Below the pieces are notes generated by a model. It saw nothing but the letters and a program-made list of their open reading frames with translations, had not been told where the DNA came from and did not search any database. Shown here piece by piece: positions 2,926 through 35,331 of a stretch of DNA of 64,000 nt (positions within the stretch are counted from its first letter, which is position 1; the number at the start of each line of letters is the position of its first letter). Source of the DNA: Ruditapes philippinarum (lineage: Eukaryota); the NCBI RefSeq assembly GCF_026571515.1, contig NW_026852366.1, positions 124,001 through 188,000 on the forward strand, in the 5' to 3' direction. Position numbers and translations under genes: made by a program.

Positions 2926-4712
2926 CTGTCGTAATCGATTTTTCTTGCTGTAAGGTTTGGAGTTACTTTTCGTGCACGTAAGTACGCAAAAGAAGAACGT
3001 CTTTTGGTTATTAAAAAGATATTACAAAATGCCGGTTAATACCAATAAAATCAATTTTATAATCTATTTTGTTTCCGGTCGTACATTCGTAAATACATTC
3101 TCTTATCTGAACGGAATGTATCACTAAAACATGTATAAAGCAAACATGATAACAATTTGTATCTATATTATCTATATTATCTCGATTACAGTTATTCGAT
3201 CAGATATTCTGGAACTATTAAATGAAGAAGCATGATTGTGACTCATATAAGGTTCAAACCAATGATCTATGGATGATTTTTGATACATTGTGCATCTTTT
3301 AAAAAGATATCAATATTTGTATTATTCATTAGCGGGACATAAAATATGATTTTTATTTAGTGCAGACAGCAGACGGCTATGACGCAAAGTCAGTAGGGGT
3401 AATAATAGGAATAGTTCTAATTCCTTTAGTGATAATAATGGTAATTGTCATCATAATTGTCATATGTTTGAAGAAGAATTGGCAAAGTAAAATACATCAA
3501 AGACGAAGAAGTAGAAGAAGCAGAGAAACAAAATCAAGCACAACTAGAACTGTTCATCAACGGGAAACAACAACTACTGGTAAAAATATGCATTAAATAT
3601 TTTCATTGCAATATTATACTCAGTAATTAAATAACGCATTCTTTCGCAAATCTTGCAAACGCCGAGCACTAATATATATATTTGTTAAAACATTAATTTA
3701 AACATTCAAATATTAATAAATTATGTATATTGACAGACACACCAATTGAAAGATTACCAGACATTCAAGAAGAAGACGACACTGCTGGATTGTCTTATAC
3801 GAGCATAACAGATCAATCTAAAGTTACACTTTTTCAAAAAGATACAGTGTCAAGAGATGGTAACGAAGAAAAAGTAGAAAGTGACGAAGAAAAAGTAGAC
3901 AAAGATAAAGTTAACAAGACACAAGAAAAATGTTCAATAGAAATAGAAAGAGTATAGTCAGAATCTGAAGAGCCAGGATCTTCTGAGATAAAAGAAGAGC
4001 CATGTCCATCTGGAGAGGATTTTATCGAAAACACCAGATTGGAAAACGACCCATGTCAGGGTATAAAAAGTGAAGTATCCATTATGCGTGTGTTTGAAAA
4101 TGAAAGTATTTTGATGTACCGTATTTGAATTCTACAAAAAATATTGTCATTGAGTACGACCCGGCTATGACATACAAAAGGGAACGAGAATTGAAATCAA
4201 AAAGTGACGATAGTCTCCATTTAACGTGTATAAGATGTAAAGAAAATGACATCGCTCCTAGAGATTTTGAATTTACCCGAGACGACAGTGACTTGAATCT
4301 CAAATCTCAAAGTAAGATAGAAATTGACGCACAGTTAGAAACAAAGATAACAAGTAGTTCTGAAGGCACATTACTAGACGATAAGAAGAGAAATGCATTG
4401 AAAAGAAAATCATCTTTAAAATACAAAGTGACAAAGAATTCGATTCAATGGAATTTCAATTATGTATCTCCGTATGCATTAACAGATAAACAAAAGCGCG
4501 AAAATAATGAGTTAAAACTCAAAATTCAGAGGCAAAGAAAACAGGCATTGAGAAGAAAGTTCTTCGAGAAAGAGAGAAAGCAGTATGAAAATCATTTAGC
4601 ATTTGAGAAATGGAAACGACAGAAACACGAGACAAATTTTAAACATTATAGACAAGACATATGGTCCATTTACAGAACAAAATTAGATAGCAATATACAC
4701 TGGTATCCTTAG
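2926..4712 (+). pseudogene. Gene A: pseudogene of the 3-exon ectodomain-less single-pass membrane protein
   Basis: Exons 2926-2977, 3361-3579 (TM: GVIIGIVLIPLVIIMVIVIIIVICLKK) and 3737-4712. Compared with gene B: start ATG>CTG (2926), in-frame TAA (2932), TAG (3955) and a frameshifting deletion near 4112. Confidence 0.8.
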
Positions 4713-4749
4713 CCGATTTTTCTTACTGTTATCACTCTAACTTTGTTAA

Positions 4750-5030
4750 AGGGGCGTCCGTGGCCGAGTGGTTAAGGTCGTTGACTTTAAACCGCTTGCC
4801 CCTCACCACTGTGGGTTCGAATCCTGATAGGGACTTTGAATTCTTTCATGTGAGGTCGCTATCCAGCCAGCTTACGGAACGTCGGTGGTTCTATTTAGAT
4901 ACCCTTTCGTGCCTGAAATAATGCGCACGGAAGGGCACATGAAGTCTTCCTCCACCAGTAAAGCTGGAACGTCGCAATGTGACCTATACTGTTTCGGTGT
5001 AACGTAAAACCCAATAAAACAAACAACAAA
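4750..5030 (+). mobile_element. tRNA-derived SINE (resembles bivalve Meta-domain SINEs, from memory)
   Basis: A box tggccgagtgg, B box ggttcgaatcc, conserved body (gctatccagc..gcttacggaacgtcggtggttcta...gtcttcctccaccagtaaagctg) and A/C-rich tail. Absent at the paralogous site ~13738; further copies occur in the window. Confidence 0.85.
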
Positions 5031-5071
5031 CTTTCAACTTTAAAAGAAATGTTAAATTTTTGGAGTTATAT

Positions 5072-8324: not shown

Positions 8325-8373
8325 ATGACGCATAGAATTATTTTGTGGATTTATATTCTACTTATATGCTGAG
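8325..8373 (+). pseudogene. Gene C': signal-peptide exon of the duplicate of gene C, with a nonsense codon
   Basis: Reads MTHRIILWIYILLIC* followed by g|gtaatt; CGA>TGA at 8370 relative to 15059-15107. Confidence 0.7.
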
Positions 8374-8784: not shown

Positions 8785-8968
8785 NNNNNNNNNNNNNNNN
8801 NNNNNNNNNNNNNNNNNNNNNNNNNNNNNNNNNNNNNNNNNNNNNNNNNNNNNNNNNNNNNNNNNNNNNNNNNNNNNNNNNNNNNNNNNNNNNNNNNNNN
8901 NNNNNNNNNNNNNNNNNNNNNNNNNNNNNNNNNNNNNNNNNNNNNNNNNNNNNNNNNNNNNNNNNNNN
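8785..8968. other. Assembly gap (N run)
   Basis: Run of n characters. Confidence 1.
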
Positions 8969-9742: not shown

Positions 9743-11777
9743 AAAATGTGATATGAATAGGCTAACAGTATATTGAATGATTGATGTTTCAAATTCTGTA
9801 TTTTTAGGTTATTAAATACAAAAATATAATTCGAGTTTGTGGCATCAAATAGATGAAGCAGTATAGGAATAAGATATAATATTCTGATTATTACAATCTA
9901 AAAACAGTGACCGTAACAAAACAAAACATTTTCATATCTATATGTACGTATTTCTTTGTACGCTTTCTTTATATGCATGATTATGACGTCACGTTAAATT
10001 ATACTTATGAATACTGCCGTGCAAAATCATTTCTGTAGAGTGGAAAATAATCTTTTAATGTATAATATATTGGACAATCTTGGGGATCTTGTTTGTTAAT
10101 GAAAAGAGTCATTATTTAGAAAACTTGACTCCATTATATTGCCTTTTTATATTCCGTGTACACTTTCCAATATATCATCATAAAATTAATGAAGGTTGTT
10201 GTGTTTAGTTTTTCTATTAATAATAACTTATGTTACATGATTACACAGATGTTTTCATGATTTTCCACGTAAGTTTCTTTTTTTGTAAATGCATAAATTG
10301 CAAAACATATTAATATATTTATATTTATATGGATTGCATTTATCATCCAATATAACAATTGCATTTATAATCCAATATGACGAGTGCAGTGCAATATCTT
10401 ACTAATAGGATGGAGAGTTATTGTATCAAAATGATTCTTTTCATTGTTATTTACGCGAATGACCATACTTTGCAAATTTAAATTTGCTAATATGTACTTC
10501 AGTCATAGTAAATTTTGTTATTATCGATACTATCGTCATCCTTTAACCCTACATGTCCGCACTTGCAAGTAGCAAGATATGTATACTTAACAAGTTTGTT
10601 TAGTGTACATTAATGTTTACATTTCAGCATATGCTTTAAATTGCTGTATAGTTGACTAAGAATTGTAATATTTTGGTAGGTATTTCATTCTCATTGTTTT
10701 AATATATAGACACACCGTTTTCAACCAAAGTCATACTACATTTAGTGCACTTTTAAATCGTGTTAATCAATAGTTTGATGTTTGTCTTATATCAACAAGC
10801 CATGGACAGAGTGTATAAACCTTCATAATGCATTTCAATAAGTACATTGTTAATCAAATATAATTAAGACATTTATCTAAAGAAAATTCGTTTTTAAAGA
10901 AGCAATAAGTATTTCATTGCACCATTAAACCCCATTTGAATGTATTGATATTTCAATTTACATTTTTACATTTGAAATATCAGTCTGAGAATAGTTCCAT
11001 AAAACGAACACTAAGATCATCTAATATCTAACCCCCAAAAGACCATCAATTTACAAATAATCATTAACATCAACAATTTCTTAATCGTTATTCATCAATG
11101 CATCATGCTTGTTCTTCAACTTTTGAAAAGATTTTAACAATCTTGTTTTCTATATACACTTACAAAGGAGGAAGTCTTCCTAGATTAATTGTTAAGCAAG
11201 TCCATTTTTGAAATTTAGCAGGGAATCAGTATATTTAGTTAACAACTTGTATAAGATTACACACCTCATTGAATACTTTTGTCTTATAAAAGTTATTATA
11301 CTATTTGGTGACACGGAAGTTCGTTCGTTAATACATTGGATTTAATGAATTGTCGATAAAATAATTTAAAAGCATGACACAAAAAATTAATATATGGATA
11401 ATCATGTATATGTTACGGATAAGTCTAGGTAATTTAAAAGAAAGTATCTTTTAAAATTTGTATTGATAAATAATATGTATTTAATAAATCTTGCATCCAT
11501 AAGTATCAAATTTACAAATTTAAAAGTATCTTACTATATTTAACATTAACGTAAATACTTTCTAAAAGATGCATTTCCTATAAATCGCATTGAAAAGTGT
11601 CAGAAATATTTTTTCTATACTGGTCCGCGCTTTGCGTTTCCATTTCGTAATCTATTTTCAAAGATGTCACTGTTTTGCGCCAGTACATAAAATGCTGGTT
11701 GTCATTAAAAGCATTATTCAGAAAGATATGGGTGGAATAATATTGGAATTAAAACTAAGTCTATTTTTCTGCCGTTA

Positions 11778-13703
11778 ATGTCGTTATCGCTTTTTCTTGC
11801 GGTAAATTTTGGAGTTACTTTTCGTGCACGTAAGTACGCAAAGAAAGAACGCCTTTTGTTTATCAAAAAGATAGTACTAAATGCCGGTTAATACCAATAA
11901 AATCAATTTTATAATCTATTTTGTTTCCGGTCGCACATTCGTAAGCGAAATACACTATATATGGACGGAATGTATCACTATAACATGTATAAAGCAAACA
12001 TGATAACAATTTGTTTTTATATTATCTCGATTACAGTTATTCGATCAGATCTTTTGAAACTATCAAATGGAGAAGCATGGTTGAGGCTCATATGAGGTTC
12101 AAACCAATGATCTATGGATGAGTTTTGATACATTGTACATCTTTAAAAAAATATCAATTTTGTATTATTCATTAGCGGGACATAAAATATGATTTTCATT
12201 TTAGTGCAGACAGCAGACGGCTATGACGCAAAGTCAGTAGGGGTAATAATAGGAATAGTTCTAATTCCTTTTGTTATAATAATGGCAATTGTCATCATAA
12301 TTGTCATATGTTTGAAGAAGAATTGGCAAAGTAAAATACATCAAAGACGAAGAAGTAGAAGAAGTAGAAGAAAGCAGAGAAACAAAATCAAGCACAACTA
12401 GAACTGTTCATCAACGGGAAACAACAACTACTAGTAAAAATATGCATTAAATATTTTCATTGCGATATTATACTCAGTAATTAAAACGCGTTCTTTCGCA
12501 AATCGCACTAATATATATAATTGATAGTATTAAAGATTTCTATTTTAATTTTTGTGGCCACCTGTATAATAATGCATTTTTAAGTGATTTCTGATTCCAA
12601 ATCCTGAATTTTAATCATCCTTTGAGATTAACACGTTGAATATTTCGTTTTTTTTTAAACATCAATTTAAACATTCAAATATAAATAAATTATGTATATT
12701 GACAGACACACCAATTGAAAGATTACCAGTCATTCAAGAAGAACACGAAACTACTGGAGTGTCTTATACGAGCATAACAGATCAATCTAAAGTTACACTT
12801 TTTCAAAAAGATACAGTGTCAAGAGATGATAAAATGGGTGAAAGTAACGAAGAAAAAGTAGAAAGTGACGAAGAAAAAGTAGACAAAGATAAAGTTAACA
12901 AGACACAAGAAAAATGTTCAATAGAAATAGAAAGAGTAAAGTCAGAATCTGAAGAGCCAGGATCTTCTGAGATAAAAGAAGAGCCATGTCCATCTGGAGA
13001 GGATTTTATCGAAAACAGCAGATTGGAAAACGACCCATGTCAGGGTATAAAAAGTGAAGTATCCATTACGCGTATGTTTGAAAATGAAAGTATTTTGAGG
13101 AAAGATGTACCGTATTTGAATTCTACAGAAAATATTGTCATTGAGTACGACCCGGCTATGACATACAAAAGGGAACGAGAATTGAAATCAAAAAGTGACG
13201 ATAGTCTCCATTTAGCATGTATAAGATGTAAACAAAATGACATCGCTCCTAGAGATTTTGAATGTACCCGAGATGACAGTGACTTGAATCTCAAATCTCA
13301 AAGTAAGATAGAAATTGACGCACAGTTAGAAACAAAGATAACAAGTAGTTCTGAAGGCACATTACTAGACGACAAGAAGAAAAATGCATTGAAAAGAAGA
13401 TCATCTTTAAAATACAAAGTGACAAAGAAGTCGATTCAGTGGAATTTCAATTATGCATCTCCGTATGCATTGACAGATAAACAAAAGCGCGAAAATAATG
13501 AGTTAAAACTCAAAACTCTGAAGCAAAGAAAACAAGCATTGAGAAGAAAGTTTTTCGAGAAAGAGAAAAAGCAGTATGAAAATCATTTAGCATTTGAGAA
13601 ATGGAAACGACAGAAACATGACAAAATTTTTAAACATTATAGACAAGACATATGGTCCATTCACAGAATGAAATTTGATAGCAATAGACACTGGTATCCT
13701 TAG
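11778..13703 (+). CDS. Gene B: 3-exon ectodomain-less type I membrane protein; exon 2 is frameshifted as assembled
   Basis: Exons 11778-11829 (MSLSLFLAVNFGVTFRA, donor gtaagt), 12205-12433 (TM) and 12706-13703 (intact tail ending WYP). Exon 2 is 229 nt versus 219 nt in A (extra agtagaagaa), giving a stop at 12399. Confidence 0.7.
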
Positions 13704-15058: not shown

Positions 15059-17579
15059 ATGACGCTTAAAATTATTTTGTGGATTTATATTTTACCAATA
15101 TGCCGAGGTAATTTTAAAGGATCTATATTAATATGTTTATTATTTTCTGCACTTCATTTTATCCTAGCATTACTCAAATATTTTTTTTTATTTACAAGTT
15201 GTAAGCCACATAAAACCAAAGTACGTCAAATTATGCCTAATGGTTTTTTCCTTTGATAAAATATAATTCATGCAGATTCGACCAGTTTCATATCTTTTAA
15301 TAGATAGATAACAAAAAATAAAAAAGAACAAATTTATACTTGATACTACATAATATTCTTGAAAGTTATATTCAAAGTGCATGTAACTGAATTGAAAATT
15401 GAACATGCATGAACTTAAAAATGATTGAATTACGGAGGCGTCCTGGGTGACCTAACGTTTTCGCTATAAGATATATTACCATCCTCCAGTAAACTAGATC
15501 CAAATAAGATAAATTTCGATAAAGATATTTTTCTTTGTCAAGAGTTGGATAAGACTGAATTTATTTGATATGGGCACTATGTTATAGACTATGAAATGGG
15601 CAATTCAACTAGCCCTGGTAGACATTTATTTTTGTTGTTGTTGTATTTTTTTGTTGTATTTTCCTGAGATGCTCCACTTTTTCATGCCTCATGAATATTC
15701 TCTACTTGCTCTTTTAATCAAAGCCGTTTGATATGATTTTAATTTACCGATTAACAGAAAGAAATGTCATTTGTTTATTAAAATGTGTGTTGTCGCATAC
15801 TGTCTGATATAGTCAGTTACTTTTGTATTATATATAATCTTGTTTATCCCGATCTCAAATTTATTAGACAGGATCTAAAACAAAAATGCATTCCATTCCA
15901 TGGATCCACACAAGATATTGAAATATTCATTGAATTACATAAGAACCTTTACAAAGTAATTATGATTAATGCAATGAGATAATTTACACGTATTTTCCTT
16001 TTGCTTTTTGTATTAATTTATCAATATATACATTGGTATATAATTTGCTGAAAGATTGCTATATGATTTATATTTTAGTGCAGTCTGCAAACGGTTATGA
16101 TGTGACGTCACCAGGAGCTATAATAGGAATCGTTCTAGTAGCTATTGTTATAATCACGGCAATCGTCATCATAGTTGTCATCTGCTTGAAAAAGACATGG
16201 CATAAACAACGAAGACAAAATACAATATCAAACAAGACAAAGAAAGTTCCAAAAAAGCCAACAACGATTTCAGGTGAATACAGTCATAACATAGAACTTT
16301 ATTAAAAGTTAAATATTCAATATATTCCCTTCTGTTAATCTTTATTGTAAACGGTATGCGGGTGCATAATAAAATGGTTTTCTCATTCATCTTATGTAAT
16401 ATGGTGTATCGTCTTTTTAAATAATTAGTTACAATTGTTGTAGAACTGTTATAATGTTATAATTTATGGTGCCATTTAAGTTGCAATCCATATTTTTATC
16501 TTAAATTAAAATGTAGATTGTGTTTGTTTAGAATTTCTTTTCACAATACATAGAAGCAATATGTAAACCTGAATTTATGTACATATATTTTAGAAACGCT
16601 TATCGAAAAATTGCCTGACATCCCAGAAGTAGACGAAAATATAAGTGCGTCTGGTGTAAGCGTAAGAGATGAATCTAAACTAACGTTTTATCAAATTGAC
16701 AATGAGGCAAGCACTACTGAAGCGGGTGACATTGATAAAGAAAATGAAAAAGTGGAACAATATGAAGCTAACAAAATAAGTGAGGATATGACTGTCTCAG
16801 TGAAAACCGATAAGATACAAACACAAACTGAAGAATCAGAAACATTTGAGAGCAAACCAGATGAACCAAAGTCATCTGGTGAGGATTTGGTAAAGACAAT
16901 CAACTGTGAAAGTGAAACAACACAGGATATAAAAAGTGAAGTATCCATCACACGTGTAATTGAAAATGAAAATATTTTGAGGAAAGATTTACCTTATTTA
17001 AACTCTACAGAACACATTTTCTCAGAATATGATCCAGCTATGACATACAAATCGGAGAGTGAATGGAAATCAAAGAGTGACGAAGGCTTACATCTACAAT
17101 CGATCAGATTTGAGAGAAAAAATATCGCTCCAAGAGCTTTTGAAATAACTCGCGATGACAGTGATTTGAATCTCAAATCTCAAAGTACGATAGAGGTTGA
17201 AATGCACGAAGCAACAAAGGTATCCAGTCGATCCGAAGGAACATTAACTGATGATATGAAAATAAAATCATTGAAAAGAAGATCATCTTTAATATCTAAA
17301 GTAACGAGCAAATCATTCCAATGGAATTTCGATTATATATCTCCATATGCAATGACAGATAAACAAAAGCGTGAGCGTTATGAGTTAAAGCTTAAAATTC
17401 GTAAGCGAAGAATGCTAGCATTGAAACAAAAGTTAGCTGATAAGGAAAGACAACAGTATGAAAATAAACTAGCATTTGAGAAATGGAAACTACGAAAACA
17501 GGGCGAGAAACATTACGAAGGAGACATTGGGTCTTTTAACAAAAGAAAATTTAATAAATATAATTACTGGTATCCGTAA
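15059..17579 (+). CDS. Gene C: intact 3-exon, 409-aa type I membrane protein with a minimal ectodomain, acidic tail and C-terminal coiled coil
   Basis: Exons 15059-15107 (MTLKIILWIYILPICR), 16079-16273 (TM GAIIGIVLVAIVIITAIVIIVVICLKK) and 16594-17579. Both introns are phase 1 GT-AG; 1230 nt open frame. Confidence 0.8.
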
Positions 17580-21300: not shown

Positions 21301-24300
21301 GCTGCAAGAAAATATAGACAGATTTTGAATAGTTACATCATCTTGCCTGACGAACTTCAGCACATTTAAACTAAGAAAGAAGTAGCGTGTATTTTTATTA
21401 TGGATTTATTCAAATTACCAAGGAAACTGCATTATCATTTAATTAATGTAAAATAAGAAATTATGTAAATTTCGTAATCACTTAAAAGTAATTAACAAAA
21501 TCGTGTAGTTTTATCAATTGTTTTGAAAATAAGATGGCACAAAAAGGCAACCTTTTCTTGACTACTTCTAAAACATATCATTCAAATAAATATATGCTCG
21601 TAGTATTTTCGAATTATGTATGTTCTGTAAAGAAAATCCTAGTGGTAATGGTATTTGAGAATAATCTTTTCACCAGAATAAGAAATCTTTGTATCACAAA
21701 TAGTGTAGTTGAATGTCATTCGCTCATAATCTGTACAGACATCCCAAACTTCGTTACCAGTCCCGCAATAGCTATTCTTTGATTCTAAATCTTTGACAAT
21801 GTAAAAATATTCTCCGAAAAACGTCGATGGACATTCTTGTTTAGCGAACACTTCACTTCCTGAAAGATACAGTCTAACTCAGTTGGTAAGTACAATGTAC
21901 GAACATAGCTGATTATATCCTAACTTGTTTGTAGAGTAAAATACAAAAAATAGAATAAATGGAAAAGATAATATTTGTTATGCAGTAGTGCCATCACCGT
22001 CATATGATATCAATATGGTCATGCAAGATTCAAGATATATGTTCATAAACATTGACGCTGACCTTTACTACACTCCACTTTTGTTTTATACAAACGTTTC
22101 AATGATCAACTGAACCACGGTTTATGACATGAACAATTAAAAGTATAAAGTTTGTTTGGTATTTAGATTGTATCTATTTCAAATTTGTATTTATTTACTG
22201 TAAAGATCGCAATGCATGACAGATATGCGTTAGAAGCAAGCGTATTACTTATTATTAATCTGTATAATAAAGATAATTTGTATTATAGTTACAAATAAGT
22301 AAAATGATGAATCAACTGTAAAGAAAAATACATAATCCTTTTTAAATGTACATGTATATGTATTTTCAGAAAATATATTTGATGAATTTATATAGATATT
22401 AAACATTTGTTTGAGATTTCTTACCTAAATAATTATAGCAATTTTAAATATTTCTTTTGACTAGCAATGCAACGACACTCAATATAAACAGTAGATAATA
22501 TTTTATCATCTCTTAACACACAAATAGCTTTACCTTGTTTGACAAGTACATGATATTCGCCAGTTTCTGGAAATTCTGCTGCTTGTGAAGCGGTTTCTGT
22601 ACTAAAACACAGCTGTTTTACTGGATCAGAAACTACTGTAGACGAAAGAGTTGCCGATATCCTCTCATATCGATATTTCTCCTCTTCAGCTTAAAATAGT
22701 AACATCTTGCTTAAAGGGTAAATTGCATATATTCTGAATGAATATGATTACTTAATGAATAAGTTATTATTAATTAATCTTACAATGTACTCGTGGTTGT
22801 TAAGGTTATCTACTACTACTATTTTACTTTTAATTCATTTTTAAAACATACAAGTTGGCATTACCAATGCATTCTTATTGTACAAGCATGAAACGTAAAA
22901 TTACAACAAGTGAATTTAATGAAACATTATATAGTGTGATACAGGGTGGTGTATGCATTTACAGATTGCTCCAGTTTACTTACAGCTGTTTTGCAACACT
23001 TAACTGGTATTAAACAACCAGAGAATGGCATGATAATTTAATAAATCTGATTGATATATTGATTAATTTCAACTTACCCCACAAAAGATAGTAATAATAT
23101 GATTGCGATGTTATTTCTTTCAATTCCATACACAAGTAAGCTGTATACGGCGCACCTAGTATTGTGATGTTCTGTGTTTGTCTTAAACGTAAATTTTAAC
23201 TTTTAATGCACTAAATGTTAAAACATATGATGCTTTCTTGTAAAATCAACTGTTAGCCTTTGATTGCCATATACAAGTGAGCGGCAAAGTAAATAATAAG
23301 CATTGAAATGCTTTTCGTTTGTCAAAACAAATAATAAATCATATTGAAAATTCCTTCTATTTTTTCTGCTGACTGTTCCAAAGTCAGAAATACAAAGCAT
23401 TGTGAAAACTATGTTAAAATTGACAAATAAAGCGTAAAATTTGCAAACAAAATTGCAACAATGCCCTTTTCTATTTTAGCTCTGAAAATGTTAACCATAT
23501 CTACCGCGTTTGGTGCTACATGCACATAGTACGAGAAACTTTGTTGTCTCTAGTCGCTGACTCTTTGCTCTTATTTCTATTGAACTGATCGTAAAAGACC
23601 ATGTTAAAGATTAATATATTCAATTCCGATAAGTCGTAAATAGATAAATAAATAAAAGACCAATTTAAAGATTAATCAATTTCTATAACTTGTATCTAAA
23701 TGAATAAATAAAAGACCATGTTAAAGATTAATCAATTTCGATAACTCGTATATAAATGAATGAATGAATGAATGAATGAATGAATGAATGAATGAATTAA
23801 TTAATTAATTAATTAATGCCAATAATTGATAAACGTTTATTTTATCAGTTGACTATAATAGCAGAATAGTTTGATATTTTGTTATATTTCATGTACGTGC
23901 GACTTTAAAATGCAATGATTGAACAGAATAAGTAACATAGAATTCCTTACACCATGATGAGGAGGAGTTTCGTTGAATCAGTACTAGTATGCAGACATTC
24001 CCAATTCTCAAACAAGTCCCCGTTTTCTGTTTGAAATTCCCACCCTGTCATGTTAGTGGTGCTAAACTTCAGCTCCCCTTTATCGCTGTCAATCCAAACC
24101 GAGTTTTGGAATTGCTCCGGTAATTCACAAAATGAGGCGATCTCTGGAATTTGAATATTAATCACATCTTTACCATACTCATTACTACACTTCTTGCTAC
24201 TGATACATTTGTTTTCCACATTTATGTGGGTAAATTTAAAATATATCTTAATGTGGAGAATCTTCAACATCATTTGTTTCTAAACCAACTTTCAGGACAA

Positions 24301-24793
24301 ATGCCGTGAAGTTGGTGAAAGACTTACACATGCATGTAATATTATGATCATTTCTTGATTGTCAACCATGCCAGTCAATCAAGCCAAGTTCAGAATGTGA
24401 GTAACGTATACATAATATACATTTATATGGGCAAGGATAATAAAAGAACAATTAAAATGAAAAGAAAGCAAATAAAATCAAATTGATGACGACGACGGTT
24501 ATGCTGATGGTTATGAAGAATTTTCTTTCAATGCCCATCATAGAAAGATACGACAGGTATAATATATAAAAACTATATACAACTATTATTGTATCAGATA
24601 TTTTATTCCTAGATTAACACATAAAAAGGTATATTTGTATCAAATATAAAATTTGTACGTTAAAAAAAGATTATCTCGCACGTTGTCTTAAGAAATAAAG
24701 ATAATATTATATTGTATAATTTATAAGAAAATCAAAACACATACCTCGGAAAAGATGAATAATAAGGATCCACATATAAAGAAAAAATAACAT
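18379..24793 (-). CDS. Gene D: 10-exon, 729-aa type I membrane receptor-like protein (Cys-rich DUF7042-like ectodomain, TM, tail homologous to genes A-C)
   Basis: Exons 24793-24745, 24143-23951, 23181-23078, 22689-22534, 21859-21674, 21191-21073, 20760-20619, 20348-20340, 19824-19630, 19415-18379. All GT-AG, 2190 nt open frame. Exons 3-8 match gene E exactly in length. Confidence 0.85.
23614..23818. repeat. Triplicated ~60-bp unit followed by a (tgaa)n/(ttaa)n microsatellite
   Basis: aaagacca..ttaaagattaat x3, then tgaa x~9 and ttaa x~5. Confidence 0.8.
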
Positions 24794-25366: not shown

Positions 25367-28300
25367 ATGGAAGTTTTGATTTATTTAGGGATATTAAATA
25401 TTTTTCTCCGACAAGGTAATAACATAAGAATTTTTTATTTGTTTATTAATCATAACTTATTAGTTTGTGTTGTAAAATTGTTGACTTGGCGGACCTTGCT
25501 GAATTATTTTTTTTAATTGTGCATCTTAAGGTGTAATAAATTGCTTCAATCTGAATACATCCTAAATAATCTCTGCGCAAATCACCGTTTCCTTGAAGTA
25601 AATGTATATTTTTCAAGATACTTCTTTGATAGCTAACATGAGGTAGAAGCAGGGTTGAAGCAGTACCCCTGTTACCATGACATATATCAATTATGATAAA
25701 AAAGTAAGATCGCTAATTCAATTAGTTATACACAGGGGACGTACCATACTTGGATCGTATTACGTTGTTATAAAAAATAAGTAGAAGATTTCCATATAAG
25801 CTATACCATTTGTTCTTATTTCAGGAGCATCCGCAGCATGCACTTTACCTGAACAATTCCAAAACTCGGTTTGGATCGACAGCGATAAGGAGGAGCTGAC
25901 ATTTAGCACTACCAACATGACAGGGTGGGATTTTCAAACTTTAGGCGTTAGTACCGTGTATGAAGAATGGGAATGTTTCCATACCAGCAATGAAGGTTCA
26001 AAGCTATATCTTATAATGATGTAAGTTAAAAATGTATAGTTTCCCCAAACAAATAATTTGAAATATTTCAGTGTAACTGATGCTTATCTTCAAAGCACGT
26101 TGAAACATTTACTTTTTGTGTGCTTTATTTGTTAATTATTTTGTAATTGAGAGCAATATTACAGAACTTTCTTACTTTATTAACGAACTGTTTTTTTTTA
26201 AATGAGGCAATATAAGGTACGATATGCTTTTGATATAGATATTTTGAACTCTATAACTGTATTACGATTTGGATTTGATATACATGTATATATTTTAGAC
26301 TTATGCTATAATAATGGGGCACGATACTGATAATGTATCTGATAATTTCTAATGGAAAATCACGAGGCTAAAATGCTGCAAATTCATTGGTAGAATTTAT
26401 AAGGTGTTGAATAAATGTTATATCATTAGAGTATATTTCATATTTCAACATGACAAAAATGTCTTACTTACTTGATTTATTTCATTTTTCATTTTAGAAT
26501 TTTTCTCATGCTTCTTTCAATTTAAGTTAAGAATTTGTATTCAGTACAATGCAGATCATATTAAAGCTATATCAAATTACACATCTTTTATGAAATTCAT
26601 AAACCGATAAAATATTTTGTTCGGTTCTTGACAGAATTGTAACTAAAAATCATGGATATGTTACTTACATGTAACACACATGAAATTAGTACGTTAACAG
26701 AATTGAAATAGCTTGGACAAAATAATATATGTTTTCAACCATTTAAAATGATTTTATGCATGTGCCATCCCATTATAAGGAAAACGTTATACAAACACAT
26801 TTCATTCATCAAGGTATTTTAAATGTATTCGTTTCTAAACACTAAATTTGTTAACTCCAGGTGGCAAATGTATGTATGCAGTTGTGTACACTTTAAATCA
26901 AACACCTATGCTTAAACGTAAACTACATGTCATTTTGATAAGTTCAAAAAGTAACATTATTCTTTCACTGATATTCTGTTGCATTTTAATTATGGTAATT
27001 GGACGAGAATAACACACAACTTATTTTATAACAGAATTGCTTTAAGAGTTAAGATTCGCTAGTAGTATATTTTGTCCATGCTTGTTACCGATTTTGCTTA
27101 ATAAAAGTTAAAAAGGGGGCTTAGTTACATTTTCATACAGGAATGGTACGACGAAATCTGTTTTTGGTTTGGGTGAACAATTTCAATTTATAGCATGGAA
27201 AACGATATAACAATGACATTTTCCCGTAAGCACACATTATAACGTACGAAGTACTGCCTTAAATTTATTCATTTAAATGTACTTGAATCAAAGTTGTTTT
27301 TTAATATTCTGGTATGCAACGACTAACAGTTTATGATACAAGAAACTATTAATTGGATTAGATTTTATTATTTATTTCATAAAATTTCGTTTCAGACAAA
27401 CACAGAATATCACAATACTTCAAGAAACATATACAGCTTATTTGTGCATGGAGTTAACGGAAATAACCTCGCAATCATATTATTACTATCTCTTGTGGGG
27501 TAAGTGACAACAACTTAAATTCGAATTGATATGAACATCTGCCTCAAAATCAGATGGATACAGAAAAAGCACAATAATCGCCCATAAGAAATATGAAGTT
27601 TTGTGTCTGAAATGGTACAGGACAAAAGGTCTCATAAAAGTATATTTTATATGTTAAATTACCAATTCATTTAGAAAACAAAGCGTGGGATGAATAGGAA
27701 GTCAATTTGATGGTATAAAGTCCTAAGCACTGCGCCAGTTCATATATTTTGCAGTGTTTAAAAGAACTGTTTAGGTAGAATATGCTATAAACCTTTTGGT
27801 TTCCACTTGTATAAGTCGCGTTTTGTATTTTCATCGCGTGTTTACACCACTTAACATTAGCGGTAAGATGAAAAATATATTCAATATTTATTGGATGAAG
27901 TTGATTTCTAAGTACAAGTTATAACGGGTATGTTTCGCAAAAAAAAAAACTGAGTATATAGCATAATTCATTTCGTCGTTCCAAAAACGAACCTAGACGT
28001 GTGTTTTTGTTTTCTGTTTTAATTTATACCAATGCAATAATTTGTTTCTGAACTAGCGGAAGAGGAAAAATACCGTGAAGAGAGAATATCAACAACGCTA
28101 GCTTCTATGTCGGTATCGGACCCTGTACAGCAGTTATGTTTTACCACAAGTAACGCTGCCCAAGCAGCGGCATATCCGGAAACTGGTGAATATCATATAC
28201 TTGTAAAACAAGGTAAGGCTTTCAAATAGATATAAATGAAACTATGTACTATTACATATATATACATTGTTTGTTAATAAATATATTTCGAAGTCTCTGC

Positions 28301-31300
28301 AGACTAAAATAGAGAAATGTGAATCTCTAAAGAAAGCCCAACACGGCAAAATTGAAAATGTTGCAGGCTCGGTTTGATTGAGCCTGTTCATGGACGGTAC
28401 TGTCAAGTGCAAACTACCGTCCACGCCCCCCTAGCACTGGCTTAAGCAGAATTCAACGTTTAACATGAAGTGACACCGTCAAACTTTGCATGGGATTTTC
28501 TTAACATGTGTCTGTAACAAAAATAGTTAAATATACTTTTGTTTTATAACCATTACATGGAAAGTCTAACCTCTCGTCATGTTCCAGGCATTGTGTTGAC
28601 CGATATGTATTACATGTATGTGAACAAATAAATGTGAACCACTAGAAACTTCTGCTAGCATCGAAGGAAAAATGTTCCTCGAATATTTGCTTGTGATTGA
28701 TACCCCCATCTCCCCAAAATAAATTTCGGACGGATCAAGTGTTATAATATGTGCCGCGTCATGACAAAACCAACATAACGGGTTTGCGCAGTCTGATCAG
28801 GATCCATGCTGTTCGCTATCACTTTCTCTACTTGTAATAGGGCTTGTAAGCGAACAGCATGGATCCTGATCAGACTTCGCGGATGCGCAGGCTTGTCTGG
28901 ATTCATGCTGGTCGCAAACGCATTACGATGGTTTTGTCGTGACGCGGCTCAATTATTTGGAATTGCAATAGAGGTATTGGCATGCATACTTAGTCTAGTA
29001 CTTTGAGTGAATACGACGTGCTCAAATTCAGACAGAAAGTAGTGACTTTAGGTATCAGAATATAAACATTTTCAAATATCGGTGAACGATTTTAACTCTC
29101 TATTATATATAAAAAAATAATCACACATTGTATATCATTTCATATGTTTAAGAATATTATAATCATTTATTGCTAAGGAAGTGAAGTTGCTGCAAAACAA
29201 GAATGTCCATCGACTTTTTTCGGAGAATATTTTTACACAGTAACAAATAAAGACACTAATACAGACTACTGTGGGACTGGTAGCGAAGTTTGGGATGTTT
29301 GTACAGATTACGAGAAAATGTCATTCAACTACACAATTTGCAGTACTCAGATTTCATATTCTGGTAATATGTTAGGCATAGCATTTAATTTACATTTTAA
29401 AATCAATATTTTTATAAATGTAAGATTATTTAGTTAAACATGATATGCTGTGTCTAGTTTGAAGTGCTCACTGTCAACTAACTTATTTGAGCTGTGATCT
29501 ACTAGAAATCTGTATTTTACTTTAGTTAGTGGTTTGATTCACCCCATCAATCACCTTTTACTGGTCGTTTCTGTGTAGATTAGTGAAAGAAGGTTTCTTT
29601 TTTAAACAATAAATACATTTTAAACAATATTATCGTAGGGTCTACCTTTATGCAGACAAGGAGGGCGTTAAACCCTTCAAAATGTTTTGTTTCCTGTCTA
29701 TATCAACCAAGAGTGTTTAAATTATGCTGAATACTTAATTTTCTTGAATATGAACTACCTACAATTATGTAGTGTGTATTCCTTATTCAATGCATTTATC
29801 GCTTTTTTCGGTCATACAATATTTACCTTCTTCGGAAGAGAATGATGATTCTAAATCAACGTAATGTTTGTAGCCATTTCTAAGAAGATGAGTATTTTAA
29901 GTTCAACCAATGCGATTAATGTGTCTATTTCTTGATCATTGTTATGTCTAATGTCTATTCCAGTGAGTTTTTATTTTCATCGCCTTAAATTTTTGACACC
30001 ATCACATTTATTTCTTTTGGGCATACGTGATTTTTTCTGGTTTGGATATCACTGTAAAGGTAAACGGCGACTCTCAAGGAAGACATCAGGTGCCCCTCCC
30101 TTATTGTTTCATGCACGAGCAGAAACCTCTGTAAAACCTCAGTGAAACAAGCCCTCTGGTTAACTAGATGGATAGCGCTTCACATGTAAGACTCAAAAGG
30201 TCCTTATGGGGTTTCAAACCCGAAGCCATAAGGGGATAATTGCTCGAAATCAACGAACAGTTGGCCACCAAAGCACATGTTTTTCAAATTTCAATTTTTA
30301 TCACATCATAACAATATTATGATAATCTTCTCGTTATTTATTTGTCTTGTAATTTCATTTTAAGAAAATGGCAGTGTGTTTTGTGTGTTCAGTTTGACAT
30401 CTGGTAGCTACACATATCACACAGTGTATAATGAAGATAATACTGTGAACCCTTCAGGTGGCACACATAGGTTTACATGTATGGTGAGTGACTTAATGAT
30501 TGTAAATCTTTTCATTAAGAAAATGTATACATGTATACATGTATACTGTTTCTCATTAAGATGTTTTGACGGACATTTCATGATGTCAATCAAAATATAT
30601 AACTTATTTTAGTAACTGTAGTTAAGTGTATCATCGGCATATTTTATTCCTACATACTTTCGCAGATACAAAAATTTGCTTTTTTCATAAGGATCGTTTT
30701 CGCGGAGAGAAGTTTTCGCTCATTAATAGTGACTGTGATATTTCATATATTTTAAACAACTCGTTACAAGAAATATCGGCCATCAACCTGTAAATTATGT
30801 AGATATTAATGCAATACTCGTAATCGTTGGGTCTTGAAAAAAATGAAAACACTTTCACGGTTTTTGACATACAGTGTATAAGTAATTGAGATGATTCATT
30901 AATCAGTAAAAGTCATTTTTCTGCCGTGTGTTTCAAATAATGTCATGTTTCTTTTATTACGTTATGAAACAAACGCACAAAAAGAAAATTACTTCTTAGA
31001 TATATGGCAATATACGCTTACAATAAAATCATCAGGATAAACTTCTTACATATTCTCATAATGATAATTCATATCCATCTATAGGTATCCTCTATAGCAA
31101 CTAATGGAAGTTTAACTGTCTCACAAACTCCAGGCAGCTGTAAAAAGGGTCAAACACCAATCGATCAACCATTGCAGGCATATCAAAACACTCCTGATGG
31201 GCTGAACATGCAGCTTACACCAAGAAGTAAGAGTAATTCAATGTCTATCAAAATCGTCTTAGGATTGAAAATGTTCTAGACTCCTAAATAAAATAGGTCT

Positions 31301-34300
31301 TAAAAATAGATACCGGTAAAATAAAAAATCTTAAAGAATGTACACATGGCTGAATTGGAAAAAAACTGATTAAGTCTGTACTTGGATAGAAGTCGTTAAT
31401 GCACTCACCCTAACACCGGCTTAAGCAGAATGCAATGGAATGTTTAAGTATGGAATAAATAAATCGTATGCACAAAAAATGGTTCATTTTTGCTTAGTTA
31501 GAAAAAAAATCTGTAAACAAAGTGATCCCTCGGAATCATTTAGCACAACAAAATTACAAGAGAATAGCAGACTAGGTTTGATTGAGTATGTACATGAGGG
31601 ATAATGAATAAGTGCAACATCCCTCACGACCCCGAGCACCGGCTTGAGCGGTACTCAAATCTCAACACTTAATTGTGCTGGCATCAATGATCCCGAAGGA
31701 CAAGAGAAATATAACACCTGCTGTTGTGAAGTATAAAAATCTGGAAACAAAGTGATCCCTCGGAAGCATTAATCACAACAAAATTACAAGAGAATAGCAG
31801 ACTTGGTTTGATCCCTCACGCCCCATAGCACCGGCTTCAGTGGTATTCAATTCTCAACAATAATAGTGCTGGCATACCATAAAGCAATTGCGTTATTTCA
31901 CAAAATAAGTAATAAAAAGAGCATCGAAACACAAGGCTATCTGATTTTTACGAGGGGGCGTATCCCCCGAGTATTAATCAGATTGCCGAGTGTTTTGATG
32001 TTCTTTCTCTTTTGAATCATAGTCAAACATATAATCACGTTCCCTGTTGTCACAATATGAAACTCCAGAAAACAATAACCAATGAACGAGCATCTTAATA
32101 TTATATTTCTATTGCTTCTCCTTTCTCTGCCGTCACAATAAGTAAACCCCAGCAAAAATGAACCAATCAATGGACATGCTCTGGAGTGCGGGTAGCTAAT
32201 AGTACTGCACTCCAGTTAACACAATGTGCATGTATATATGTATACGATTTAACTCTGACACATTTTCAACAGAAAGGTCCTAAAACTATGATACAATTTT
32301 AGTTAGTTATTATTTAAGTTTTATTAGGAAACTGGTACTATATGTAACGATGTCTTTCATAAGCTTTAAAATTGTTTATTTTTCTCTTTCAATGCAGGGT
32401 TATGTCGTGAGTAACATTTTATTACATCCTCTCATCTTTTGTTATGAAAATAATGACACGCCTTCAAGATTAATCAACTTATAAAAATCATATATGTTAA
32501 AATCAAACCTGTTCTCCCTCATGCGTCATAAATATTCTAGACATTATGATTATACAAAATGTATTAACAATGTTAAAAGACAGCTTCGCAAAATTATCGT
32601 TTCTCCATATTTCTTTTGTGTAATTCTTATTATGAAAAAATAACTTTAATTCCAAACCTTTTTCAATAGCTAAAACAGACGAAAGTAGTAGTAGCGGGTT
32701 GTCAACTGGTGCAATAGTCGGCATCGTTTTTGGCATTCTCGTTTTAATAGCAGCCGTTATTCTGATGTGTCTGTTGTGTAAAAGAAAGAAAGGGAAACAG
32801 AATAAGAAAGAACAAGAAAATGAAAACGTGAACACTGTAGAATCGCCGAGGTCTAAGAAACGTATGTACGAGCAGACATTGCAACAACATTACAATTAGT
32901 TTGAGTGTCTATTAAGTAAATAAGTAGTATGCACGCGTATAGTGACAACATATAGAGCAAACATTTAGAAAAGTAGTCCACACTGAAAATAAAGCTTGAA
33001 TTTAGAATAAAACAGCTTAGTTGAAATCAATTTTCATTTTATCAATACAACTGTTTCTATTCACGAAATTAGTCGAATTTTGTGTTTTTAGTCCGAATTA
33101 ACCTAAAAATAGTTACACTATACATTTGGTTTGACTCTATAAAGGGTTTTTCTATTTTGATTTTATGAGGTGACAGTCCGGACATTTTGCACAGATCAAC
33201 AATAATAAAGTAAGACATTTAAACTTGCACCATTTGCTTACGGAATTTGGTTGCACATGGAAATTGTGAAGTATTCCTTTATAATGCCTTGTTTCACATA
33301 CGAAAAGATTTAGTATCATTAATATTGCAGTGTGTATTTTCTTTTCAATTCATTTAAATATATTTACTTATTAATACTCCGTAACTTTTTAACAAATAAT
33401 TATTAATGTTTTGTTTTATACTGTATGAAAGAAGCATATCATTTACACGATATTAGCACTGCTAGCATGACAGGTATACATGTAATATGAAAAACAAAAA
33501 TTGTATTTGTCATTTTCAACTTAGTTTAACCAAATGCATAGTAATTTGATAACTGTGCATCTTACACACTTTCCGTTCAATGCATGAGCTGGTTCTCATA
33601 CTGCGTTTATTGCTTATCTAAGTACATATGTAGGATAAAACAAATATAATTTACCCTTAAACTTTTTTTATTTTTATTCTAGTTTCAGTTGATATTGACA
33701 ATATACCTCATCAAAGGTCACCTCTCTGGGTTAACGGACCACAAGGAATAGCCCCTATTGAAACAAAGTATAATGGCGATCACAGAATTTCAAAATCTCC
33801 AGTATTAGACAAACAATACAATCCCTTTTCAGTGTTTCCATTTGGTAAAGGAAAGAAAAGTAAACAAGAAGACACGCAAAACGGACATGAACTAACTGTC
33901 TTTCAATTAGATGGAAATGATAACATCAAGGAGTATCCTTTGAGTAAAGAGAAAAATATACCAAATGACACCAATTTGTCTGACAGTCAAAAATTGAAAA
34001 CAATTACAATGGCTAATAACCAAAAGTCAGAAAGACTTTCTATTGAAGATTTAGAAAATAATAAAGTTATACCGACAAGACCGGACAATTATGCAATGCC
34101 TGTTTTGAGGGCAGAGACAAGTGACAAAGATAGTTCTCAGATATTTCAAACAGGAAGCAATGGTAACACATCAAGAAATTCAAATGTAACACCGAAAGCT
34201 ATTGTGTTACAAACAGATGATAATGCGATATATCCGTCACATACTCAACTTTCATCGCATACTCCAAAAGTTAATTGCGAGAAACAATCAAAGGAAGCTA

Positions 34301-34434
34301 AAATATGTCGTACAAAAATTGACCTTAACGACAGCGAGGTTGCAACCCTTTCTCAAAGACCCTATAAACAGCAGAGTTTAGGATTATCAACAGCAAACCA
34401 AGTAAGAGAATATCAATTACCCCTGTTTTGGTAA
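25367..34434 (+). CDS. Gene E: 10-exon type I membrane receptor-like protein with the same ectodomain as D and an unrelated cytoplasmic tail
   Basis: Exons 25367-25415 (MEVLIYLGILNIFLRQ), 25825-26020, 27396-27499, 28057-28212, 29178-29363, 30365-30483, 31085-31226, 32398-32406, 32670-32861 (TM GAIVGIVFGILVLIAAVILMCLLCKRK) and 33683-34434. 634 aa as assembled; the last exon probably runs on to ~35331. Confidence 0.85.
28295..28470 (-). mobile_element. Copy of the V-SINE-like 3' repeat
   Basis: Reverse complement of 1445-1606. Confidence 0.7.
28751..28950. mobile_element. 200-bp MITE (Sola2-like GAG terminus)
   Basis: TIRs gtgccgcgtcatgacaaaacc / ggttttgtcgtgacgcggctc, a long internal IR (agtctgatcaggatccatgctgttcgct) and AT-rich 4-bp flanks. 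Confidence 0.75.
30040..30270 (-). mobile_element. Degenerate copy of the tRNA-derived SINE
   Basis: ggaagacatcaggtgcccctcc and ggatagcgcttcacatg are reverse complements of the SINE body at 4750-5030. Confidence 0.6.
31508..31875. repeat. Local direct duplication containing SINE-related fragments
   Basis: aaacaaagtgatccctcggaa.catt...caacaaaattacaagagaatagcagact occurs at 31515 and 31745; both are followed by an agcaccggctt motif. Confidence 0.7.
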
Positions 34435-34869
34435 CGGAAAAGTTTAAAAAAACGAAAATGAAAAACCTGAAAAAAAGACTGGAAAGCTTCTAAGGGAAAC
34501 CCCAAAAACAAGCGGAGAAAGTGACACAGTCCTAAAATTGTCAAAAAAAATGGAAAAAGAAAGTATAAAAAGTGTCGAAAAAAAAATCACCGGGAGGGGA
34601 GAAATGGGTGAGCAAACCTTTGAAAAAGAGGGAAAAAAACAAAATTACGGTTTTTTCAAGAGTTAAAAAAAATCTGAAAAAAACTAAAAAGCCCAAAAAT
34701 CGTCACAAAATTCCAAAACCCAAAAAGAAAAACTAAAAAAGAGGGGGCCAAACTCTCAATGATTTATTTAAATCAAAGTCCCGTTGGTTTCATTAAAAAA
34801 ATTTAAAAAAAGGGAAAATTTTCAACGAAGAATCCCAAAAATCACTGAAAAAACCCAATCTTATTTGAA

Positions 34870-35331
34870 TATATCGGAAAATGATAATTCAGGTATATGC
34901 TACGACGATGATAACGAGAAAGCAAGAGTTTAGGGTATTGGAATGATGATTCGTTGGGCAGGCAAATGAGAACGGCGATATTCGAAGAGAGTAGAATAAA
35001 AAACGCCATATGACATTGAGACTGGGCTCTAGGTTCGACTGACGATACAGAAAATGATCTCCACTTGACACTAGATACTGCAATTTTTCCGAAAGGAACA
35101 GTCAGTGCTAGAACTGTAAGTGCCATCACAAGCAGGATTGACAGCAGAGGTGCAAAGTATTTCATCGAAAACGAATCAGCTTCTATTGTTATACAAGTAA
35201 AAGCAGAGGATGTACCAGAAGATTTTGGAGTTGATTATCTTACAGGCGATACACATACAAAGGATGACGAGGAACATGTCACCTTCGAAGAAGATGACGA
35301 CGAGGGGGAAGATGAAAGTATGAAAATTTAG
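34870..35331 (+). CDS. Probable acidic C-terminal continuation of the last exon of gene E
   Basis: Coding-like sequence with ORF 35065-35331 (…HVTFEEDDDEGEDESMKI*), separated from 33683-34434 by a homopolymer-inflated, Lys-rich stretch. Confidence 0.5.

What the first reader, a model, noticed from the sequence alone, without database searches (positions are those of the whole stretch)
2926..35331. Modular receptor/adaptor cluster: one ectodomain with two tails, and one tail with or without the ectodomain
Seen in sequence: D = signal + 12-Cys ectodomain + TM + tail-1; E = signal + same ectodomain + TM + tail-2; C, B and A = signal + ~10-aa stub + TM + tail-1. Signal exons of C, D and E are all 49 nt and phase 1; C and D share W8-I9 and R16, and their TM exons are both 195 nt. 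None of this is visible in the ORF track. Inference: a mix-and-match family resembling paired receptors with ectodomain-less partners, possibly acting in recognition (immune, allo- or gamete) or ciliary anchoring. I know of no description of it.
Basis: partly seen in the sequence, partly recalled or inferred. Interest (0 to 1): 0.85.

Follow-up and report, generated by a model that had tools for sequence, protein, structure and literature searches.

The report
Clam receptor genes with swapped modules
A Manila clam gene cluster holds membrane proteins that combine one cysteine-rich outer domain with two different inner tails, plus a conserved relative that keeps a tail but has no outer domain; it is real and undescribed, but nothing shows the proteins work as receptor-adaptor pairs.

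Summary
The window is Ruditapes philippinarum contig C853. The modular layout is real. C (signal, 13-aa stub, TM, tail-1) equals RefSeq LOC132758182 exactly, and spliced transcript contigs support both of its junctions. D (729 aa: signal, 12-Cys ectodomain, TM, tail-1) and E (634 aa: same ectodomain, TM, tail-2) are intact GT-AG models lying head to head. RefSeq holds only their 3' parts, starting inside the TM exon just after a 9-nt micro-exon; one transcript contig joins D's exon 7, micro-exon and TM exon.

Corrections: A is a pseudogene and B has a 10-nt frameshift in its TM exon. The gap touches no exon but covers the A/B duplication junction. E's last exon is unproven.

The ectodomain belongs to the uncharacterised mollusc DUF7043/DUF7042 family; a paralogue folds as two beta-barrels. 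The stub+tail-1 and ectodomain+tail-1 forms both have Mercenaria orthologues, and the tail-2 form has a Mactra orthologue, so all three designs are old.

No TM charge and no conserved ITIM or ITAM was found, so the receptor-adaptor reading is unsupported. Tail-1 ends in one long charged helix. A protein language model places it nearest CCDC181, but profile searches find no homology.

The same scan noted related genes just upstream on this contig.

The parts
15059..15107 (+). Gene C exon 1: signal peptide exon, 49 nt, ends in phase 1
   Evidence: The joint 15107>16079 is seen in an X1 contig. The product equals RefSeq P0001.
16079..16273 (+). Gene C exon 2: 13-aa stub, TM helix and basic juxtamembrane stretch; 195 nt, phase 1 in and out
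   Evidence: The joint 16273>16594 is seen in contigs of three studies, X1, X2 and X6.
16594..17579 (+). Gene C exon 3: tail-1, 327 aa plus stop
24745..24793 (-). Gene D exon 1: signal exon, 49 nt, phase 1
20340..24143 (-). Gene D ectodomain cassette. Exons 24143-23951, 23181-23078, 22689-22534, 21859-21674, 21191-21073, 20760-20619 and the 9-nt micro-exon 20348-20340. Total 909 nt, phase 1 to phase 1, 12 Cys.
   Evidence: Splice sites and frame. Collinear with E. DUF7042 hit on exon 5. An X1 contig runs from the TM exon into the micro-exon and exon 7 (loose end at 19824).
19630..19824 (-). Gene D TM exon, 195 nt
   Evidence: The joint 19630/19415 is seen in X1. RefSeq P0164 starts at a Met inside this exon.
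18379..19415 (-). Gene D tail-1 exon with stop
25367..25415 (+). Gene E exon 1: signal exon, 49 nt, phase 1. Its ATG lies 573 nt from D's ATG on the other strand.
25825..32406 (+). Gene E ectodomain cassette. Exons 25825-26020, 27396-27499, 28057-28212, 29178-29363, 30365-30483, 31085-31226 and micro-exon 32398-32406. Total 912 nt, 12 Cys.
   Evidence: No transcript evidence was laid on this stretch.
32670..32861 (+). Gene E TM exon, 192 nt
   Evidence: RefSeq P0163 starts at a Met inside it and uses its donor.
33683..34434 (+). Gene E tail-2 exon up to the stop used by RefSeq
   Evidence: P0163 is contained in the model. Tail-2 is unique in the genome.
35065..35331 (+). Possible last exon of E (tail-2b). 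Its junction to the rest of E is unknown.
   Evidence: 35095-35205 is 49% identical to the C-terminal part of the Mactra E-type protein P0046, collinear with the other exons. No in-phase junction was found.
2502..4712 (+). Copy A: signal exon 2502-2556, TM exon 3361-3579 (219 nt), tail exon 3737-4712 with a nonsense codon and a 7-nt deletion. A is a pseudogene.
   Evidence: One TAG was also reported.
11374..13703 (+). Copy B: signal exon 11374-11428, TM exon 12205-12433 with a 10-nt insertion (frameshift and stop), intact tail exon 12706-13703
   Evidence: No RefSeq protein for B appeared.
8325..8373 (+). Orphan copy of C's signal exon, with TGA at codon 16. It lies 412 nt left of the gap.
8785..8968 (.). 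Assembly gap, on the junction of the A and B duplication units and in no exon

Best explanation
This is part of a gene cluster, specific to venerid-type clams, of type-I single-pass membrane glycoproteins of the mollusc DUF7043/DUF7042 family. The cluster diversified by tandem and inverted duplication and by gain or loss of a whole exon cassette.

Shown. The ectodomain is coded by seven exons that together start and end in phase 1. The signal exon ends in phase 1 and the TM exon starts in phase 1. The cassette can therefore be present (D, E) or absent (C) without breaking the frame, and different tail exons can follow the TM exon. D, E and C are intact. D and C are transcribed. A and B are decaying tandem copies of the C type. 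All three designs predate the split of Ruditapes from Mercenaria or Mactra.

Inferred. By a model of a paralogue, the ectodomain is two disulfide-braced 8-stranded beta-barrels, which would suit binding a ligand. Tail-1 is a mostly disordered cytoplasmic tail with conserved short motifs. It ends in one roughly 50-residue charged helix carrying an AFEKWK motif and a terminal WYP. Tail-1 most likely docks the protein to a cytoplasmic partner, possibly the microtubule cytoskeleton as CCDC181 does. On that reading D would couple ligand binding to this docking, and C would supply the same docking module at the membrane without a ligand-binding part, as a constitutive anchor or a competitor.
For: Organism and the C model. 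D and E models with canonical sites and correct phases. RefSeq fragments P0164 and P0163 lie inside the models.

Transcript contigs: C joints 15107>16079 and 16273>16594, D joint 19630/19415, and D exon 7 + micro-exon + TM exon in one contig. C and D are both covered in three contig sets and in raw RNA reads.

Family: the exon-5 profile finds 243 cluster representatives. All 20 whose names were looked up are molluscs, and all 10 that were scanned carry PF23069.

Orthologues: Mercenaria P0004 (stub + tail-1) and P0166 (PF23069 + RLC + TM + tail-1) lie on the same contig. Mactra P0046 is E-type. The tail tree gives a stub clade (87/89) and an ectodomain clade (95/94), each with a Mercenaria member. 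D/E nucleotide similarity is confined to exons.

Folds: paralogue P0011 has pLDDT 91.9, and fold matches fall in two blocks, residues 27-162 and 169-308. The tail-1 end has a helix at residues 53-105 of the 125-aa piece with pLDDT 90-97. CCDC181 clusters are the nearest neighbours for both the C and the D tail.
Against: Function is not tested at all. The CCDC181 likeness scores 0.87, below the tool's 0.9 line. Pfam and PDB profile searches give nothing. hhalign against the clam's own CCDC34 domain matches only 10 columns at 0.8% probability.

The beta-barrel matches have Z of 7.7 or less, which is within the tool's background. The fold was predicted on a paralogue, not on D or E.

E's ectodomain exons and D's exons 1-6 have no transcript evidence here. 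The signal-to-TM joint of C rests on one contig with a 28-letter side. The direction of the event (cassette loss or gain) is not resolved, because the trees are rooted only at the midpoint.
Confidence: 0.7

Rival explanations
1. Paired receptor plus adaptor system. D and E would be an activating/inhibitory-type pair with one ligand specificity and two outputs. The ectodomain-less C/B/A proteins would be signalling adaptors that associate with them in the membrane.
For: D and E share 75% identical ectodomain residues over exons 4-8 but have unrelated tails. They share a 573-nt divergent promoter region. C and D are co-expressed in all four runs laid. C is conserved.
Against: The TM helices of C, D, E and their orthologues have no charged residue. 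No ITAM was found. The only ITIM-like site (ISYEPL in D) is absent from the Mercenaria orthologue. C has the same tail as D, unlike adaptors, which bring a different signalling tail. Two of the three supposed adaptors are broken.
Confidence: 0.07
2. The ectodomain-less genes are functionless remnants: truncated duplicates of a D-like gene on their way to decay, with no role of their own.
For: A has a nonsense codon and a frameshift. B has a frameshift in its TM exon. An orphan signal exon carries a stop.
Against: C is intact, spliced and expressed at depths comparable to D. It has an intact Mercenaria orthologue with a good signal peptide. The stub clade is separate from the ectodomain clade in the tail tree, so the form has been kept since before the two genera split.
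Confidence: 0.12
3. Assembly artefact for part of the cluster. A and B would be two haplotypes of one gene placed in tandem by scaffolding across the gap, so the cluster would have one A/B-type gene, not two.
For: The gap sits exactly on the duplication junction. A/B exon divergence (4-6%) overlaps the divergence of C transcripts between individuals, about 3.4-4.6% in X6. JGI fragment P0005 is a third variant that mixes A-like and B-like residues.
Against: Non-coding parts of the two units are only 82-85% identical, whereas intronic contigs of C differ from the assembly by about 1-2%. A and B carry different disabling lesions.
Confidence: 0.15

Closest known systems
DUF7042 domain-containing proteins of molluscs (Pfam PF23069, with DUF7043/DUF7044 N-terminal modules), for example Mercenaria LOC123559173, Mactra KAL4229796 and Potamilus, Sinanodonta, Mytilus and Haliotis proteins
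   Same: They share the same two-module Cys-rich ectodomain at the same position (second module near residue 166), a signal peptide and a single TM. The four Cys in exon 5 are invariant across 12 copies in this genome.
   Different: None is characterised. The tails differ between members. The conserved ectodomain-less relative and the sharing of one tail by forms with and without the ectodomain have not been described (searches found no paper).
Paired immune receptors with ITAM adaptors (KIR, LILR, PILR or SIRP with DAP12 or FcR-gamma)
   Same: They are clustered genes with near-identical ectodomains on different tails, alongside small type-I proteins with very short ectodomains.
   Different: Here there is no charged TM residue, ITAM or ITIM. 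The ectodomain is not an Ig or C-type lectin domain. The short protein carries the same long tail as one of the receptors.
[quoted passage not shown]
   Same: Tail-1 has a charged helical C-terminal region with an A-F-x-x-W-x-x-K type motif. CCDC181 clusters are the nearest neighbours of both the C and the D tail in the protein-language-model search.
   Different: CCDC181 and CCDC34 are soluble proteins. No profile-level homology was found, and the scores are below the tool's 0.9 line.
Calycin-type 8-stranded beta-barrels (lipocalins, Tp0751, nitrobindin, potempins)
   Same: Each ectodomain module of paralogue P0011 aligns to such barrels over 76-109 residues.
   Different: Z is only 5-7.7, sequence identity is under 12%, and Foldseek finds nothing at E of 0.001 or better. 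The tandem disulfide-rich pair on a TM anchor is not a known lipocalin arrangement.

Membership tests
Pfam DUF7042 (PF23069) family | HMM match above the gathering score (27 bits) | tested here: inconclusive
D exon 5 alone scores 17.5 bits (E 0.0041) on profile positions 2-54 of 123, because the domain is split over exons. The D-type orthologue P0166 carries PF23069. All 10 relatives found with the exon profile and scanned match PF23069 (24.4-83.9 bits); nine exceed the 27-bit gathering score and P0094 scores 24.4.
Pfam DUF7042 (PF23069) family | Conserved cysteine pattern of the module | tested here: met
   Four invariant Cys across D, E and 10 further copies in this genome. Six invariant and six nearly invariant Cys in the 35-protein alignment.
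Paired receptor / ITAM-adaptor systems | Charged residue in the TM helix of the receptor and of the adaptor | tested here: not met
   The TM windows of C, of the Mercenaria C and D types and of the Mactra E type are purely hydrophobic. The D and E TM exons were read.
Paired receptor / ITAM-adaptor systems | ITAM in the adaptor tail and ITIM/ITSM in the inhibitory receptor tail | tested here: not met
   The regex scan found no ITAM in any tail. The single ITIM-like site in D is not conserved in P0166.
Paired receptor / ITAM-adaptor systems | Closely similar ectodomains on different tails within one gene cluster | tested here: met
   D and E are 75% identical over 204 ectodomain residues and their tails are unrelated.
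CCDC34 (PF13904) / CCDC181 | Profile-level sequence homology | tested here: not met
   No PF13904 hit at E up to 10 for 7 tail-1 sequences. hhalign of the tail-1 profile against the clam's own CCDC34 domain (88 bits to PF13904) matched 10 columns at probability 0.8%. CCDC181 has no Pfam model, so only the language-model likeness (0.87) is available.
CCDC34 (PF13904) / CCDC181 | Microtubule binding and ciliary or flagellar localisation | not testable with these tools
   This needs co-sedimentation or imaging.
Calycin/lipocalin-like beta-barrel fold | 8-stranded up-and-down barrel with a clear structural match | tested here: inconclusive
   The model of paralogue P0011 has pLDDT 91.9. The best Z is 7.7, under the tool's caution line of 8. 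Foldseek found nothing.

The most novel reading that the evidence does not exclude
C-type stub proteins and D-type receptors form mixed complexes through their shared TM segment and tail-1 helix. These complexes would link a two-barrel extracellular ligand sensor to ciliary or cortical microtubules through a CCDC181-like module. E would send the same extracellular signal to a different output. This would be a mollusc-specific membrane-to-cytoskeleton recognition system in which the dose of the ectodomain-less partner tunes the response.
Probability: 0.07. Interest if true: 0.7.

Novelty: new member of a known kind. Interest (0 to 1): 0.35.

Why it matters
The finding gives correct full-length models for two clam genes that RefSeq holds only as tail fragments starting inside the TM exon, just after a 9-nt micro-exon, under misleading names ('chromatin assembly factor 1 subunit A-B-like').

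It also documents a clean natural case of exon-cassette modularity. One phase-1 cassette is present or absent, and there are at least two tails, or three with the tail-3 exon next door. All forms have been kept for a long time in Venerida. That makes an uncharacterised, mollusc-wide receptor family (DUF7042) approachable by experiment: compare D, E and C.

It does not by itself reveal a new mechanism.

Tried and rejected
- Joined D and E proteins were built only inside scripts, to check frame, count Cys, and compute identities and trees. Under the operators' rule they were not sent to any search or fold tool, so D and E were searched exon by exon, and the fold was predicted on paralogue P0011.
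- Complex prediction on the D tail-1 end with the C tail-1 end gave no answer (score 0.00). This is no evidence either way.
- A PDB sequence profile search with tail-1 found nothing at E up to 10.
- Foldseek against PDB with the ectodomain model found nothing at E of 0.001 or better. The top rows had TM-scores of 0.2 or less and are not meaningful.
- A loose end before C's TM exon, which read in frame, looked like an alternative upstream coding exon. It is an interspersed repeat with more than 300 genomic copies that also sits beside the orphan signal exon. It was rejected as an exon.
- No in-phase splice path from tail-2a to 35065-35331 could be derived from sequence alone.
- Literature searches for DUF7042-7045 and PF23069 found no paper.
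Full report
**Source and layout.** The window is contig C853:124001-188000 of a 1.4-Gb assembly. The tail exon of gene C is 100% identical to RefSeq 'uncharacterized protein LOC132758182 [Ruditapes philippinarum]' (P0001), so the organism is the Manila clam. Self-comparison shows tail-1 four times:
- A at 3679-4709 (+)
- B at 12636-13700 (+)
- C at 16557-17576 (+)
- D at 19368-18382 (-)

It also shows two collinear sets of ectodomain exons, D on the minus strand and E on the plus strand. Tail-1 occurs nowhere else in the genome, and tail-2 is unique.

**The gap.** N 8785-8968 lies between A's stop (4712) and B's first exon (11374). No exon of A to E is near it. An orphan copy of C's signal exon (8325-8373, with TGA at codon 16) lies 412 nt to its left. 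An open frame starts at 9212 to its right. A unit of 131-8403 is repeated at 9229-15137 with 82-94% identity, so the gap covers the junction of a roughly 9.1-kb duplication. Continuity across it cannot be shown here. The C, D and E models do not depend on it, but the adjacency and number of A/B units do.

**Gene C.** The exons are 15059-15107 (49 nt), 16079-16273 (195 nt) and 16594-17579, all GT-AG and phase 1. The spliced product equals P0001 exactly. Reads and contigs were laid on 14700-20600:
- The joint 16273>16594 appears in contigs of three studies (X1, X2, X6).
- The joint 15107>16079 appears in one X1 contig, with a 28-letter side.
- Raw RNA reads (X23) cover the tail.

The runs are labelled RNA only by guess, but intron-less joints show cDNA. 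A loose end before the TM exon that read in frame proved to be an interspersed repeat with more than 300 copies. It is a haplotype or intron variant, not an exon. So C is not the 3' end of a longer ectodomain-bearing transcript.

**Gene D.** D has ten exons on the minus strand, coding 729 aa, all GT-AG and in phase. They include a 9-nt micro-exon (20348-20340) that supplies the twelfth Cys. An X1 contig joins the TM exon to the tail exon (19630/19415). Another runs from the TM exon into sequence that reads as the micro-exon plus the end of exon 7, with a synonymous TGT>TGC change that keeps the Cys. RefSeq has only P0164 (378 aa, named 'chromatin assembly factor 1 subunit A-B-like'). It starts at a Met inside the TM exon and is residues 352-729 of the model.

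**Gene E.** E has ten exons on the plus strand, coding 634 aa up to the stop at 34432-34434. RefSeq P0163 (282 aa) again starts inside the TM exon and confirms the junction 32861>33683. Both RefSeq models begin just after the micro-exon, which probably broke the automatic models. Whether 35065-35331 belongs to E is open:
- The Mactra antiquata protein P0046 (843 aa) has the ectodomain, TM, a tail-2a-like stretch and a stretch 49% identical to 35095-35205, in the same order.
- However, I found no in-phase junction, and no reads were laid there.

D and E start codons are 573 nt apart on opposite strands.

**Copies A and B.** Their signal exon homologous to C's is 55 nt (2502-2556, 11374-11428). 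A's TM exon (219 nt) is intact, but its tail exon has a nonsense codon and a 7-nt deletion. B's tail exon is intact, but its TM exon has a 10-nt insertion in an AGA/AGT-rich stretch that leads to a stop before the donor. One base of that insertion could be an assembly error. No RefSeq protein for B appeared.

**What the ectodomain is.**
- D exon 5 hits Pfam DUF7042 weakly (17.5 bits).
- The genome has at least 12 copies of this exon with four invariant Cys.
- A profile of them finds 243 cluster representatives.
- The 20 whose names were looked up are all bivalves or gastropods and none has a name based on a characterised function.
- All 10 scanned match PF23069, nine of them above its 27-bit gathering score, some with weak DUF7043/7044 hits in the first module.
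- No paper mentions these names.
- Paralogue P0011, folded with 35 relatives, gives pLDDT 91.9.
- VIA-align matches fall in two blocks, residues 27-162 and 169-308, and are mostly lipocalin-like 8-stranded barrels. Z is at most 7.7, inside the tool's background. Foldseek finds nothing.

**What the tails are.** Tail-1 has no Pfam or PDB match. It has blocks conserved between D and C types: ITRV.EN..LRKD.P.LNSTENI, F.F.RDDSDLNLK, SEG.L.D, and WNF.Y.SPYA..KQK. These are followed by a basic stretch, EN.LAFEKWK, and a terminal WYP. The end folds as one helix (residues 53-105 of 125, pLDDT 90-97) with disordered flanks. The ESM Atlas puts both the C and the D tail nearest CCDC181 clusters (0.87; 176 and 172 shared features), with CCDC34 close behind (0.85 and 0.84). 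That is a lead only. hhalign against the clam's own CCDC34 domain matches just the 10-column F-E-x-W motif at 0.8% probability. CCDC181 is a microtubule-binding protein of sperm tails and motile cilia (PMC12123824).

**Age of the designs.**
- Mercenaria has P0004 (signal, stub, TM, tail-1) and P0166 (PF23069 ectodomain, RLC, TM, tail-1) on one contig.
- In the tail tree the stub forms (P0004, P0003, C, B, A) group at 87/89 and the ectodomain forms (P0166, D, P0167) at 95/94. Both designs therefore predate the split of the two genera.
- D, E, P0166 and P0046 form one ectodomain clade (100/100) that is unresolved inside.
- D-E identity (75%) is slightly above D-P0166 (68%). This might reflect gene conversion between the head-to-head genes, but it is not shown.
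- D/E nucleotide similarity stops at the exon borders.

**Mechanism and rivals.** The cassettes are 909 and 912 nt and are flanked by phase-1 junctions. This explains how the modules can be exchanged without breaking the frame. The receptor-adaptor reading fails its defining tests: no TM charge and no conserved ITAM or ITIM. A structure-prediction test of D-tail with C-tail gave no answer. Function therefore remains an inference.

**Earlier notes of this scan.** Notes on the same stretch, and on two related genes just upstream, agree with the models. I tested the C model, the head-to-head pair and D's micro-exon myself.

Noticed in passing
window 9212-9739 (+); copies at window 147-653 and at C853:114000-114501 and 104591-104839: This open frame is 31% identical (E 4e-14) to the C-terminal cytoplasmic part (residues 412-567) of Mya arenaria DUF7042 protein P0114. 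It is therefore a third tail type of this receptor family. It recurs about every 10 kb along the contig. The copy at 9212 looks like an orphan made by the A/B duplication.
   Followed up: partly
window 16273 (donor of C's TM exon), run X6: A contig joins the C-like TM exon at its donor to 47 letters that read in frame as a Ser/Thr-rich stretch. These letters have no match in this assembly at up to 2 mismatches. They may be an unassembled exon or a paralogue present in another individual.
   Followed up: partly
G000:C563:22878-29224 (-): A third ectodomain-bearing paralogue, closer to E than D is: up to 93% aa identity in one exon, and introns alignable at about 70%. It has a TM exon but no tail-1 or tail-2. 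ORFs with an AN1-type zinc-finger pattern (by eye, IGHMBP2-like C-terminus) lie about 3.3-4.3 kb beyond its TM exon, on the other strand.
   Followed up: partly
window 17714-17753: The transcript contigs of C (+) and D (-) end within about 40 nt of each other, so the convergent 3' UTRs nearly abut or overlap (table 8).
   Followed up: no
window 8432-8461 and an X1 contig next to 15137/16076: An interspersed repeat with more than 300 genomic copies sits beside the orphan signal exon. In another individual it appears inside C's first intron, which is a structural polymorphism of that intron.
   Followed up: yes
P0011 (Ruditapes LOC132741821, contig C3496): This RefSeq paralogue ends right after the Cys of the micro-exon position and has no TM segment. 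Other family members may also be cut at the micro-exon in the public annotation, or a secreted form may exist.
   Followed up: no
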